The notes below the pieces were generated by a model, which saw nothing but the letters and a program-made list of their open reading frames with translations, did no database searches and had not been told where the DNA came from. Made by a program: the position numbers and the translations under genes. 55,109 nt of DNA from Basidiobolus meristosporus CBS 931.73 (Eukaryota > Fungi > Basidiobolomycota): assembly GCA_002104905.1 (NCBI GenBank), contig MCFE01000592.1, forward strand, positions 1 to 55,109, in the 5' to 3' direction. Shown one piece after another: positions 30,100 to 32,012 of this stretch (the stretch's first letter is position 1; the number at the start of each line of letters is the position of its first letter).

Positions 30100-30118
30100 C
30101 CAATCACCTTCGACCACA
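30100..30118 (+). promoter_or_regulatory. ERSE-like element CCAAT-N9-CCACA upstream of the HAC1/XBP1 gene, with a TATAAA at 30214-30219
   Basis: Sequence CCAAT caccttcga CCACA has exact 9-nt spacing, about 210 nt upstream of the ATG. Function is not demonstrated. Confidence 0.35.
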
Positions 30119-30325
30119 TTTGAATATTTGATGTATCCTATCAAAGAGTGTTCTTCGGCATCTGCGGATTCTCATGTCAAGGAATACCAAAGACATTCTT
30201 GGCGCGAAGAATTTATAAATACCCGACAATGTAACCATCAGAACTCAAGAAATCCAACTCATCTTGGAGTACATACGCAACCTGTTTCTTGAATCTAGTG
30301 CCACAGATCAAAGCCGCTAGTCGTC

Positions 30326-31412
30326 ATGTCCTCTCTTCCCTCAAACCTCCCCCTACAACCAACCATGGTGCCAATTTTAGGGATTGAGGACATGGCGACA
30401 CTCGACAATAAGCTTTTCTTGAGTGTCTCACCTTTTTCGACGCAGAGTAACCATATCGATTCCGACTCGGATTCCAACTCTCTACCTTCTACTCCACCCT
30501 CCATATCGCCAACGAATCCACTCATCCCCGACCAATCATCCTACACTAAATTGCTCGATAACGACCTCCAGTCGCCTGCCTTCCCGCTTAACCCGACCAC
30601 ATCCCCACGAGGTCCTAGCGAGGCGCCGGTGAAACAGGAATGCATTAGCCCACAAGGGATTTGTGATTCGAAAAGAACCAAAACCGGAAACAAGGTTGGT
30701 CGCAAGCGCAAGAGTGAAGTGGTCGATAAGGAGGCCAGGGCAAAAGAGAGGTAGGTCATTGGCCGCATGACAGTACCCCCAGGCCGCGATTTCTAACGAT
30801 TTTCTCAGGGTTATTCGGAATAGAGCCGCTGCCCAAGAATCCAGGGATCGTAAGAGACGCTACATCACCGATCTGGAGGAGGCAAACACCCAGCTTCATG
30901 TGGAGAATGAGAAGTTGGGGAAGAAACTCTATGCAGTCGAACAAGAAAAGCTAACCTTGTCGAGGCAACTTGAAGCAATCACTGCTCAACTTGCCATGTT
31001 CCAAGCTCAAGCGCAAATGGTCGAGATGTCAAATTTCCTTTTTGACGGCTTTGGCGAGTCAGCAGTACTCACCAAGTTCAGACACGGTAAACGTGTCTGG
31101 AATTCTCAGCAGCGGAGGCCGTCAATTTACCAGAGGAACCTTCACAAAATGACTTCAACGGAATCTATGCACCTCAGCCAGCACAATGCTACGGCAACTA
31201 TGTTGATCCTCTTGTGGATCTTCAGCTTTGGCCTCAAGGTCAGCATTATCAGCCTCTGGCGCCAAAAGATTTCCCAATGTGATAAAGAAGTCATGGACAT
31301 CCCGACCTTACTCAAGCTTTCCCAGGAAATGCTTGAACCAAATGTGAAGGAATTGCACAAAGACTGGAGCTCATCTCCATCTTTGAACAATCAGTCTTTA
31401 TGGCCACCCTAA
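30326..31412 (+). CDS. HAC1: HAC1/XBP1-family UPR bZIP transcription factor; unspliced form about 342 aa, IRE1-spliced form about 283 aa ending at 31282
   Basis: Removing spliceosomal intron 30751-30808 gives KERVIRNRAAAQESRDRKRRYITDLEEAN plus a leucine zipper. Downstream are two IRE1 consensus loops flanking a 47-nt segment. Confidence 0.88.
31042..31125 (+). other. IRE1-cleaved non-canonical intron (31063-31109, 47 nt) within a four-helix RNA structure
   Basis: 7-nt loops CAG|CAGT (31060-66) and CAG|CAGC (31107-13). Stems: 31051-59/31067-75, 31079-86/31092-99, 31104-06/31114-16 and closing helix 31042-50/31117-25. Confidence 0.85.
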
Positions 31413-32012
31413 CGGGGCATTTGTAATTATATTCTGACGCAGCAATCGGGGACCGAACAAGCGTGACCCCTCAGCCTTACTGCATCCTTTTCTCTGATTT
31501 GTTAACTGAATCTTCAGAATGATTTCTCGGCTGTGTATTTTTATTTTCCTTCAGTTGGCGCAATGAGTTCGCACAATTCAATCCGAATAAATGATCAAAC
31601 AAACAAAAAACTTCTACACACTCTCCAAAGCACCCCGGTTGGACCGGCGATCCACCAAGCCCACCCAATTTTTTTGGGTTTGTTTAAACCACCAACGAGC
31701 TTCGGCACTTCTGACCTCTCTTTTGGTTCATCAAGTATCTGAATTACCCAATGTACCCAACTTCAGTGGTTTTCCCAATCCACCCAAACTAGTAGTCTTT
31801 GATCTGTTTACGTCAACGAGTGTAACCTCAACGGCGACAACTCGATCGATGTTTTACTCCTCGATCACTTGCTATGTAGATCAAACACGTTGACGTATGA
31901 GGCGCAACCATCCAACAATTCTGATTTCAAATCAGGTGGATTTGAATGTATATGATCAGTTCGATGACCAGCAACTGGTCTGGTTTATTTAAAAGTACAT
32001 CTGACGTCACGT

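What the first reader, a model, noticed from the sequence alone, without database searches (positions are those of the whole stretch)
31042..31125. IRE1-type unconventional intron folded as a trifurcated (four-helix) structure with a 47-nt intron
Seen: the 84 nt tile almost without gaps. The closing helix is TTGACGGCT/GGCCGTCAA (8 WC + 1 GU). Hairpin 1 is TTGGCGAGT-[CAGCAGT]-ACTCACCAA (8 of 9 paired). Hairpin 2 is a perfect CAGACACG-[GTAAA]-CGTGTCTG. Hairpin 3 is TCT-[CAGCAGC]-GGA. Both 7-nt loops match the IRE1 consensus CNG|CNGN. Excising 31063-31109 (47 nt, not a multiple of 3) shifts the frame to give ...GESA-AEAVNLPEEPSQNDF...KDFPM* (stop 31282). The junction peptide ESAA matches the spliced mammalian XBP1 junction. 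Established: HAC1/XBP1 introns are about 20 nt in filamentous ascomycetes, 23 in Arabidopsis bZIP60, 26 in mammals, 56 in Cryptococcus HXL1 and 252 in S. cerevisiae, and short ones form a bifurcated stem-loop. Inference: this is the UPR switch of an early-diverging fungus, with a third arm inserted between the cleavage loops. Standard GT-AG gene predictors would miss it.
Basis: partly seen in the sequence, partly recalled or inferred. Interest (0 to 1): 0.85.

Follow-up and report, generated by a model that had tools for sequence, protein, structure and literature searches.

The report
Unannotated IRE1-type intron in Basidiobolus
A stress-response transcription-factor gene of the fungus Basidiobolus meristosporus carries a 47-base intron of the rare kind cut by the stress sensor IRE1 rather than the spliceosome; the mechanism is well known, but gene models miss this intron, and it has an extra central hairpin shared by other early-diverging fungi.

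Summary
At 31042-31125 the sequence is as described. It folds far better than shuffles (z = -5.96). It holds the only pair of stem-closed CNGCNGN loops within 300 nt anywhere in the window.

The host gene is a bZIP gene of Basidiobolus meristosporus CBS 931.73. Its public model is the 342-aa unspliced form.

Removing 31063-31109 (47 nt) shifts the frame to a 283-aa product with an acidic tail.

Four further Basidiobolus copies keep the same layout, with introns of 47 or 59 nt. All 100 scored base-pair cells pair. Four pairs of the exon-exon helix and three of the central arm show compensatory changes.

Homologues in Conidiobolus, Massospora, Endogone and Geosiphon have the same junction, with introns of 44, 41, 107 and 152 nt. 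Actinomortierella has the two loops 47 nt apart. All lengths are 2 mod 3.

A transcript-like contig from a Mortierella-like fungus carries exactly the predicted spliced junction.

Splicing was not seen in Basidiobolus itself. The one RNA run shows only the unspliced mRNA, in contigs that drop rare forms.

Verdict: very probably a genuine HAC1/XBP1-type intron, a new member of a known kind with a conserved extra arm. The scan's notes hold no earlier IRE1/HAC1/XBP1 finding.

The parts
30257..31556 (+). Transcribed span of the bZIP gene as seen in RNA contigs
   Evidence: Contigs of run X3 cover 30257-30748 and 30807-31556, with sequencing adapters at both outer ends.
30326..30750 (+). Exon 1: start codon, Ser/Pro-rich N-terminus and first half of the basic region
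   Evidence: Translation and gene model reconstruction. Matches the public protein P0001 at 100%.
30751..30808 (+). Ordinary spliceosomal GT-AG intron, 58 nt
   Evidence: The only in-frame GT..AG solution. A joint skipping 58 nt is seen in an RNA contig of run X3.
30809..31412 (+). Exon 2 read in the unspliced frame (bZIP, junction region, basic/hydrophobic tail, stop at 31410-31412); gives the 342-aa annotated protein
   Evidence: Pfam bZIP_1 at 8.9e-08 and bZIP_2 at 1.4e-07. Translation.
31042..31050 (+). S1 closing helix, 5' strand (in the 5' exon)
   Evidence: Pairs with 31117-31125. 100% of cells pair in 5 Basidiobolus copies, with 4 compensatory pairs. 6 of 9 pairs are compensatory across 9 sequences from three phyla.
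31051..31075 (+). Hairpin 1 (S2) with loop CAGCAGT at 31060-31066; predicted 5' cleavage after G31062
   Evidence: Stem kept in all copies. 5 of 9 pairs are compensatory across phyla.
31063..31109 (+). Predicted IRE1-excised intron, 47 nt
   Evidence: Distance between the two CAG|CAG sites. It is retained in the dominant mRNA of run X3.
31077..31101 (+). Central (third) arm, lying wholly within the intron: 8-10 bp stem with a GTAAA loop
   Evidence: RNAfold gives -15.4 kcal/mol for the arm alone. 3 compensatory pairs among the three 47-nt copies.
31104..31116 (+). Hairpin 3 (S3): TCT/GGA around loop CAGCAGC at 31107-31113; predicted 3' cleavage after G31109
   Evidence: Invariant in the 5 Basidiobolus copies. 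U-G becomes C-G in other genera. Not predicted by RNAfold.
31117..31125 (+). S1 closing helix, 3' strand (in the 3' exon)
31110..31282 (+). 3' exon read in the spliced frame: 56-residue acidic tail AEAVN...KDFPM, stop at 31280-31282; total product 283 aa
   Evidence: Tail net charge is -6 in all four copies examined. The motif DLxxW is shared with Endogone and Hesseltinella.
31200..31259 (+). Hydrophobic segment MLILLWIFSFGLKVSIISLW, present only in the unspliced frame
   Evidence: Highest Kyte-Doolittle 15-residue mean is 2.0-2.4 in all four unspliced proteins and at most 1.15 in the spliced ones. Conserved in alignment.
31398..31412 (+). Unspliced-frame C-terminus L-W-P-P-stop
   Evidence: Conserved in Basidiobolus copies. 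...PP-stop also ends the Endogone protein and several proteins with Geosiphon-like tails.

Best explanation
The element is the unconventional, IRE1-cleaved intron of a HAC1/XBP1-type bZIP mRNA of Basidiobolus meristosporus.

Shown:
- The mature, spliceosome-processed mRNA keeps 47 nt (31063-31109).
- The surrounding 84 nt can form a four-way junction. It has an exon-exon helix S1, hairpin 1 and hairpin 3 that each present a 7-nt CAG|CAGN loop, and a central arm made only of intron.
- S1, hairpin 1 and the central arm are held by compensatory substitutions.
- The layout recurs in paralogues and in three fungal phyla.

Inferred:
- Under ER stress, IRE1 cuts after G31062 and G31109.
- S1 keeps the two exons together and extends by 4-6 further pairs (a zipper) once the intron leaves.
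- A tRNA ligase joins the ends.
- The -47 nt shift replaces a 115-residue basic tail, which carries a hydrophobic segment and ends in WPP-stop, with a 56-residue acidic tail that makes the bZIP protein an activator.
- The central arm probably acts as a rigid spacer that sets the two loops side by side for an IRE1 oligomer. Its sequence and length drift while its pairing is kept.
- The hydrophobic segment of the unspliced product may bring the mRNA-ribosome complex to the ER membrane, as in animal XBP1u.
For: - Sequence, fold and uniqueness.
- Host gene: a bZIP. The public model is the 342-aa unspliced form.
- Loop motif: both loops fit CNG|(C/A)NGN in a 7-membered loop (PMC8104961).
- Five Basidiobolus copies (window, L001, L005, L002, L003): introns of 47, 47, 47, 59 and 59 nt, all 2 mod 3. 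100 of 100 cells pair in S1, hairpin 1 and hairpin 3, with 4 compensatory pairs. Slid controls pair at 34-62%.
- Central arm: 87.5% paired with 3 compensatory pairs. The 59-nt copies fold a different, longer arm in the same place.
- Other phyla: Conidiobolus 44 nt, Massospora 41, Endogone 107 and Geosiphon 152 share the geometry. Actinomortierella has the two loops 47 nt apart. All are 2 mod 3. Over nine sequences (the five Basidiobolus copies plus Conidiobolus, Massospora, Endogone and Geosiphon), S1 pairs at 89% against 19-54% when slid, with 6 of 9 pairs compensatory. Hairpin 1 has 5 of 9 compensatory.
- Shifted frame: open, acidic (net -6) and conserved. The junction SA|AEA and a DLxxW motif recur across phyla.
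- Spliced form in a relative: contig L012 from run SRR33245415 reads ...CAGTCTG|CAGCAGAAGCTGG. This equals the Actinomortierella genomic sequence minus its 47 nt.
- Spliced form in a gene model: the Hesseltinella model removes a 257-nt stretch that starts CA and ends TG, exactly at these sites.
- Literature: RNA-seq showed such an intron in Rhizopus arrhizus (PMC10946435).
- Zipper: folding the joined exons extends S1 in all nine sequences, as described for XBP1 (PMC4687415).
Against: - No spliced molecule was seen in Basidiobolus. The RNA contig of run X3 spans 30807-31556 without a gap, and no 31062/31110 joint was listed. Contigs drop rare forms and the culture was presumably unstressed, so this is weak evidence.
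- Hairpin 3 has only 3-4 pairs, shows no compensatory change, and is not in the RNAfold optimum.
- No Rfam family matched.
- Presence of IRE1 and of a tRNA ligase in this genome was not checked.
- S1, hairpin 1 and the tail motifs lie in coding sequence, so part of the conservation could be protein-driven. Against that, the compensatory changes alter the amino acids on both strands (D to G together with V to A).
Confidence: 0.88

Rival explanations
1. IRE1 cuts the two loops but the mRNA is then degraded rather than re-ligated. This would be a RIDD-type decay site, as in Schizosaccharomyces pombe, where IRE1 only degrades mRNAs.
For: No ligated form was seen in Basidiobolus. S. pombe keeps IRE1 without a HAC1 intron (PMC12530127).
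Against: - Decay needs neither two sites a fixed 2-mod-3 distance apart nor an exon-exon helix with compensatory changes.
- It also needs no open, acidic, conserved reading frame after the shift.
- Ligated forms exist in relatives.
Confidence: 0.04
2. It is a structured coding-region element unrelated to IRE1, for example a translational pause or an mRNA-stability hairpin. On this reading the CAGCAG loops merely encode Ser-Ala and Gln-Gln.
For: The structure lies inside an ORF, and CAGCAG is a common triplet repeat. No Rfam hit.
Against: - This is the only stem-closed loop pair in 110 kb of sequence.
- It sits just after the leucine zipper of a bZIP gene.
- The loop sequences are invariant while the stems co-vary.
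- The same junction appears spliced in relatives.
Confidence: 0.03
3. It is a true IRE1 intron, but the central arm has no role. It would be a tolerated insertion that happens to fold, and the working structure would be the ordinary bifurcated stem-loop.
For: - Arm sequence and length vary freely, leaving 21-126 nt between the hairpin 1 and hairpin 3 regions.
- In Massospora the arm is weak.
- HAC1 introns of 19-850 nt all work.
Against: Pairing in the arm is kept by 3 compensatory changes among the 47-nt copies. An arm is present in every lineage examined. That argues for selection on folding, at least to keep the linker from interfering with the two cleavage hairpins.
Confidence: 0.3
4. The 3' cut lies in a different register: the overlapping heptamer CAGCGGA at 31110 would give a 50-nt intron. 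That is also 2 mod 3, with one alanine fewer in the product.
For: Overlapping CNG[CA]NG matches at 31110 and 31113.
Against: - These heptamers are not closed by any stem.
- The B. ranarum copy reads CTGCAGC at the first position, keeping that register.
- Spliced proteins of relatives read SAAEA, which fits the 47-nt register.
Confidence: 0.03

Closest known systems
Metazoan XBP1 bifurcated stem-loop (26-nt intron; S1 exon-exon stem, S2 and S3 exon-intron stems, exon zipper ES1; PMC4687415)
   Same: - Two 7-nt C(N)G|CAGN loops on short stems above an exon-exon stem.
- Predicted extension of that stem after cleavage.
- A frame shift that swaps a tail bearing a hydrophobic segment for an activating tail.
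- From my memory of the human sequence, not tested: the 5' hairpin sequence and the ESA(A) peptide are nearly the same.
   Different: - The intron is 47 nt (59 in a paralogue), not 26.
- The linker between S2 and S3 folds into a fourth helix, giving a four-way rather than a three-way junction.
- S3 is only 3-4 bp.
- The ligase in fungi is expected to be Trl1-type, not RTCB.
Fungal HAC1/hacA/HXL1 unconventional introns (19-29 nt in many ascomycetes, 56 nt in Cryptococcus HXL1, 252 nt in S. cerevisiae, up to about 850 nt in the CTG clade; PMC3154848, PMC6222058)
   Same: A bZIP host gene, CNG|C splice sites in two hairpin loops, IRE1-dependent excision, and an intermediate intron length like that of Cryptococcus.
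   Different: - There is no sign of the yeast-type block by intron-5'UTR pairing.
- The unspliced frame instead encodes a conserved hydrophobic segment and a WPP-stop end.
- Whether Cryptococcus or Ustilago introns also carry a central arm could not be checked here.
Rhizopus arrhizus HAC1 (G6F37_009984), a noncanonical intron found by RNA-seq (PMC10946435)
   Same: A zygomycete homologue of the same family, unannotated and supported by RNA-seq. The related Hesseltinella gene has a 257-nt intron at the same sites.
   Different: The Mucorales intron is much longer. The paper's text gives no structure, and its figure is not held. The Hesseltinella 5' loop reads CAGCACG, off consensus at +3.
Plant bZIP60 (about 23-nt intron; the unspliced protein is membrane-anchored)
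   Same: The unspliced form carries a hydrophobic segment that splicing removes.
   Different: Different kingdom and a short intron with twin hairpins only. This comparison rests on general knowledge and was not tested here.

Membership tests
HAC1/XBP1 IRE1-spliced intron | Host gene encodes a bZIP transcription factor, with the intron just downstream of the leucine zipper | tested here: met
   Pfam bZIP_1 at 8.9e-08 and bZIP_2 at 1.4e-07. The intron starts about 70 codons after the basic region.
HAC1/XBP1 IRE1-spliced intron | Two 7-membered loops with CNG|(C/A)NGN, cleavage after the G at position 3 | tested here: met
   CAGCAGT at 31060 and CAGCAGC at 31107. Motif taken from PMC8104961. The loops are kept in all copies.
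HAC1/XBP1 IRE1-spliced intron | Each loop closed by a stem, and an exon-exon stem beneath them (bifurcated stem-loop) | tested here: met
   S1 and hairpin 1 are supported by compensatory changes. Hairpin 3 has only 3-4 bp, is conserved, shows no covariation, and is absent from the MFE fold.
HAC1/XBP1 IRE1-spliced intron | Intron length is not a multiple of 3, and excision opens a conserved alternative C-terminus | tested here: met
   Lengths of 47, 47, 47, 59, 59, 44, 41, 107, 47, 152 and 257 nt are all 2 mod 3. The spliced tails are acidic and conserved.
HAC1/XBP1 IRE1-spliced intron | The intron survives nuclear splicing and is removed from mature mRNA in vivo, more so under ER stress | tested here: inconclusive
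   In run X3 the mRNA lacking the 58-nt GT-AG intron still holds the 47 nt, and no spliced contig was listed. The spliced form is seen only in relatives.
HAC1/XBP1 IRE1-spliced intron | Cleavage depends on IRE1 and joining on a tRNA ligase | not testable with these tools
   Needs enzymology or genetics. The presence of IRE1 and Trl1 genes in this genome was not checked, because I had no query sequence from a tool.
HAC1/XBP1 IRE1-spliced intron | Exons zipper into an extended stem after cleavage (ES1 of XBP1) | tested here: met
   RNAfold of the joined exons extends S1 by 4-6 pairs in all nine sequences. This is a prediction only.
XBP1u-type co-translational targeting of the unspliced mRNA | Hydrophobic segment in the unspliced-frame tail, absent after splicing | tested here: met
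   Kyte-Doolittle maxima are 2.0-2.4 in unspliced tails and at most 1.15 in spliced proteins. Segments scoring 1.4-2.4 also occur in Massospora, Endogone and Geosiphon, but not in Conidiobolus (0.81).
XBP1u-type co-translational targeting of the unspliced mRNA | C-terminal translational pausing peptide placed so that the hydrophobic segment has left the ribosome | tested here: inconclusive
   A conserved ...WPP-stop...KYPP-stop or ...RPP-stop lies 38-78 residues after the hydrophobic segment in the related genera measured. Counted from the Basidiobolus sequences, the distance is about 46-57 residues. Pausing itself was not tested.

The most novel reading that the evidence does not exclude
Early-diverging fungi keep an ancestral, animal-like XBP1 switch rather than a yeast-like one.

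It would have two parts. The first is an IRE1 intron built as a four-way junction. The second is an unspliced-frame tail with a hydrophobic segment followed about 40-80 residues later by a conserved W/K-x-P-P-stop. That ending would stall the ribosome and deliver the mRNA to ER-bound IRE1 co-translationally.

If true, XBP1u-type mRNA targeting predates the split of animals and fungi and was lost or replaced in Dikarya.
Probability: 0.3. Interest if true: 0.75.

Novelty: new member of a known kind. Interest (0 to 1): 0.45.

Why it matters
**Annotation.** The real UPR activator of Basidiobolus is a 283-aa protein that no public model shows. The same error affects its paralogues and the homologues in Conidiobolus, Massospora, Endogone, Geosiphon and Actinomortierella.

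**Comparative biology.**
- HAC1 homologues are called hard to detect in zygomycetes (PMC10946435). Here a profile built on the Basidiobolus copies recovers the family across Zoopagomycota, Mucoromycota and Glomeromycotina.
- The RNA layout is conserved: exon-exon stem, two cleavage hairpins, and a variable central arm.
- The layout is supported by many compensatory changes, which makes a usable covariance model possible.

**Evolution of the UPR.** The 5' hairpin and the hydrophobic unspliced tail look more like animal XBP1 than like yeast HAC1. That makes the question of the ancestral control mode in opisthokonts directly testable. The mechanism itself is textbook, so the surprise is moderate.

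Tried and rejected
- **Rfam.** A scan of 30200-31700 at E up to 10 gave only four chance hits and nothing related to HAC1/XBP1.
- **RNA runs.** A search for RNA runs listed none. A search of any kind gave seven runs. Of the four I laid, one labelled 'DNA?' (X3) proved to be RNA, but it shows only the unspliced form. Both read tools are now at their caps, so raw reads could not be searched for the junction.
- **Run X4.** It holds a relative about 91% identical over the whole gene, with no listed indel in 31042-31125. Its substitutions in the element fell in the rows not shown, so it added no covariation.
- **Word-indexed protein search.** It found only Basidiobolus proteins. The exhaustive profile search was needed to reach other phyla.
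- **L004 (B. ranarum).** It is probably the closest copy to the window gene, but its contig ends before the intron.
- **Actinomortierella.** The genomic fold is not meaningful, because a GT-AG intron ends 5 nt before the 5' cleavage site and hairpin 1 exists only after nuclear splicing.
- **Literature.** Hooks and Griffiths-Jones 2011, the reference survey of these introns, is not held. I therefore cannot say whether it already lists zygomycete introns or a central arm. Searches for the UPR in Basidiobolus or early-diverging fungi found nothing relevant.
Full report
**1. What is in the sequence**

- It contains CAGCAGT at 31060-31066 and CAGCAGC at 31107-31113.
- Each heptamer is flanked by complementary bases.
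- Between them lies a perfect 8-bp hairpin, 31079-31086 with 31092-31099.
- The outermost nine bases on each side are complementary, 31042-31050 with 31117-31125.

The 84 nt fold at -38.0 kcal/mol against -21.1 +/- 2.8 for 200 dinucleotide shuffles (z = -5.96).

The proposed four-helix drawing costs -33.6 kcal/mol. That is 4.4 above the optimum, which pairs into loop 1 and leaves out the 3-bp hairpin 3.

Across both strands of the 55-kb window there are 264 CNGCNGN heptamers. Sixteen are closed by at least 3 pairs. Only one pair of those lies within 300 nt of each other: this one.

**2. The gene**

The element lies in a two-exon gene:
- exon 1, 30326-30750;
- a 58-nt GT-AG intron, 30751-30808;
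- exon 2, from 30809.

Exon 2 encodes a bZIP domain (Pfam bZIP_1 8.9e-08, bZIP_2 1.4e-07).

The unspliced frame runs to 31412 and gives 342 aa. This is identical to the public protein K493DRAFT_291610 of Basidiobolus meristosporus CBS 931.73. The organism is therefore an early-diverging fungus, and the public model is the unspliced form.

Removing 31063-31109 gives a 283-aa protein that ends ...KDFPM, with the stop at 31280-31282.

**3. RNA evidence in this organism**

One run listed as 'DNA?' (X3) is in fact RNA.
- Its contigs carry sequencing adapters at 30257 and 31556.
- They skip exactly the 58-nt GT-AG intron.
- They run uninterrupted from 30807 to 31556.

So the gene is expressed, and the 47 nt survive nuclear splicing. 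The dominant mRNA under that (presumably unstressed) condition is unspliced, as expected for HAC1u/XBP1u.

No 31062/31110 joint was listed. Because contigs drop rare variants, this neither shows nor excludes splicing.

**4. Paralogues and orthologues in Basidiobolus**

Protein searches found four further complete copies:

| Locus | Species | Intron |
|---|---|---|
| L001 | B. ranarum | 47 nt |
| L005 | B. meristosporus (shares FMO-like and arrestin neighbours with L001) | 47 nt |
| L002 | B. meristosporus | 59 nt |
| L003 | B. ranarum | 59 nt |

All carry the two loops.

In the five-sequence alignment A3, all 100 base-pair cells of S1, hairpin 1 and hairpin 3 form standard pairs. Four S1 pairs change on both sides (A-U to G-C, C-G to U-A, G-C to A-U, C-G to U-A). 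Sliding the 3' partners by 1-3 columns drops pairing to 34-62% with at most one such pair.

These changes alter the encoded residues on both strands (FDGF/EAVN against VGGF/EAAN). They are therefore not a by-product of protein conservation.

The central arm of the three 47-nt copies is 87.5% paired with three compensatory pairs. The 59-nt copies fold a longer, different arm in the same place.

Hairpin 3 is invariant, which says nothing for or against it.

**5. Both reading frames are kept**

Downstream of the junction, the unspliced frame conserves two features:
- a hydrophobic segment, W-I-L-I-W-I-F-S-F-G-L, with a Kyte-Doolittle 15-residue mean of 2.0-2.4;
- a C-terminus ...SL.N..LWPP-stop.

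The spliced frame conserves AEA(V/A/T)N... and VD.NLDLQ(L/F)W, and has net charge -6 in all four copies examined.

The two best-conserved motifs are encoded by the same nucleotides in different frames, so conservation cannot be assigned to one frame alone. Even so, the shifted frame stays open for 43-56 codons in every copy.

**6. The family beyond Basidiobolus**

A profile of the five proteins, searched exhaustively, gave 130 hits at E <= 1e-10. The top hits carry a junction motif of the G-F-x-(E/D/Q)-S-A type about 80-90 residues after the basic region.

Named members come from Endogone, Actinomortierella, Bifiguratus, Geosiphon, Massospora, Conidiobolus coronatus and Hesseltinella.

The fetched loci hold the twin loops at these spacings, all 2 mod 3:

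| Genus | Intron length |
|---|---|
| Conidiobolus | 44 nt |
| Massospora | 41 nt |
| Endogone | 107 nt |
| Actinomortierella | 47 nt |
| Geosiphon | 152 nt |
| Hesseltinella | 257 nt |

In Conidiobolus, Massospora, Endogone and Geosiphon the geometry is the same. An 8-9-bp hairpin 1 abuts S1, and a 2-5-bp hairpin 3 abuts the other strand of S1, which runs to 10-12 bp (5-6 bp in Conidiobolus and Geosiphon). A central arm of variable size lies between them. Conidiobolus has a perfect 8-bp arm; the Massospora arm is weak.

Nine sequences were scored by fixed registration: the five Basidiobolus copies plus Conidiobolus, Massospora, Endogone and Geosiphon.
- S1 pairs in 89% of cells, against 19-54% when slid, with 6 of 9 pairs changed on both sides.
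- Hairpin 1 pairs in 89% of cells, with 5 of 9 changed on both sides.

**7. Spliced forms exist in relatives**

- Three database proteins read straight through the predicted junction...GETAAEAVEIDD...CQSAAEAGS and ...CDSAAEVV.
- The contig behind the second (L012, from run SRR33245415; 1,697 nt, one uninterrupted ORF) reads ...CAGTCTG|CAGCAGAAGCTGGCTCCAC. This is the Actinomortierella genomic sequence with its 47 nt removed.
- The Hesseltinella gene model removes a 257-nt stretch that starts CA and ends TG, exactly at the two sites. That suggests a transcript-based model.
- RNA-seq showed an unannotated noncanonical HAC1 intron in Rhizopus arrhizus (PMC10946435).

**8. How it most likely works**

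By analogy with the XBP1 bifurcated stem-loop (PMC4687415):
- S1 holds the exons together;
- hairpins 1 and 3 present the scissile G|C bonds to IRE1;
- after cleavage the exons zipper further, eject the intron and align the ends.

RNAfold of the joined exons extends S1 by 4-6 pairs in all nine sequences and places the junction in a 9-nt loop.

The extra arm is intron-only. Its pairing is conserved but its sequence is not. I infer that it acts as a spacer that keeps a long linker from interfering with the hairpins and may fix the relative position of the two loops. That role is untested.

The switch in protein terms runs from a basic tail with a hydrophobic segment to an acidic tail.

The unspliced tails of Basidiobolus, Endogone and several proteins with Geosiphon-like tails all end in ...PP-stop, and Massospora-type tails have ...KWFPP three residues before the end. 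A hydrophobic segment lies 38-78 residues upstream of the stop in the related genera measured. This resembles the XBP1u arrangement of a hydrophobic region plus a pausing peptide, which I know from general knowledge. It is a lead, not a finding.

**9. Comparison and novelty**

All sequence-level features that define a HAC1/XBP1 intron are met. The in vivo and enzymatic features are untested here.

Known introns range from 19 to about 850 nt, so a 47-nt intron with an internal hairpin is a member of the family, not a new kind.

What is new in practice:
- the intron is unannotated;
- the four-way layout is shared across zygomycete phyla with strong covariation;
- the unspliced tail looks animal-like.

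I could not read Hooks and Griffiths-Jones 2011, so prior description of zygomycete introns cannot be excluded.

The scan's own notes contain nothing on IRE1, HAC1 or XBP1.

Noticed in passing
window 31398-31412; proteins P0007, P0012, P0015-P0017, P0025, P0028, P0029, P0013, P0040: The unspliced-frame proteins end in a conserved proline pair just before the stop: ...SLWPP in Basidiobolus, ...AKRPP in Endogone, ...DWRKYPP in Geosiphon. Unnamed hits P0015-P0017, P0025, P0028 and P0029 end ...DWRKYPP, ...EWRNWPP or ...NKWPP. Massospora-type proteins have ...KWFPP three residues before the end. This may be an arrest or slow-termination signal like the XBP1u pausing peptide.
   Followed up: partly
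L005:1501-2465 (B. meristosporus), L002:1501-2499, window 30326-31412: B. meristosporus has at least three copies of this bZIP gene, all keeping the unconventional intron. The copy on L005 shares its neighbours (an FMO-like gene and an arrestin gene) with the B. ranarum gene on L001. Its public model (P0006) lacks five residues of the basic region, so it is either a mis-drawn intron or a decaying copy.
   Followed up: partly
L009:2100-2260 (Actinomortierella wolfii): A spliceosomal intron ends (...TATTAG) only 5 nt before the IRE1 5' cleavage site. Hairpin 1 and the exon-exon stem can therefore form only after nuclear splicing, an enforced order of the two splicing systems.
   Followed up: no
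L011:1690-1990 (Hesseltinella vesiculosa): The public gene model already removes the 257-nt unconventional intron, whose ends are CA..TG. The 5' loop reads CAGCACG, which departs from the CNG|(C/A)NGN consensus at position +3.
   Followed up: partly
L002:1501-2499 and L003:1501-2496: The 59-nt-intron paralogue has no spliceosomal intron at all, while the 47-nt copies keep a 57-58-nt GT-AG intron inside the basic region.
   Followed up: no
window 30100-31595 against run X4: A DNA run of another organism label holds a contig about 91% identical over the whole gene (131 substitutions, 15 gaps). It is probably a further Basidiobolus species or strain. No indel was listed inside the 84-nt element.
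   Followed up: no
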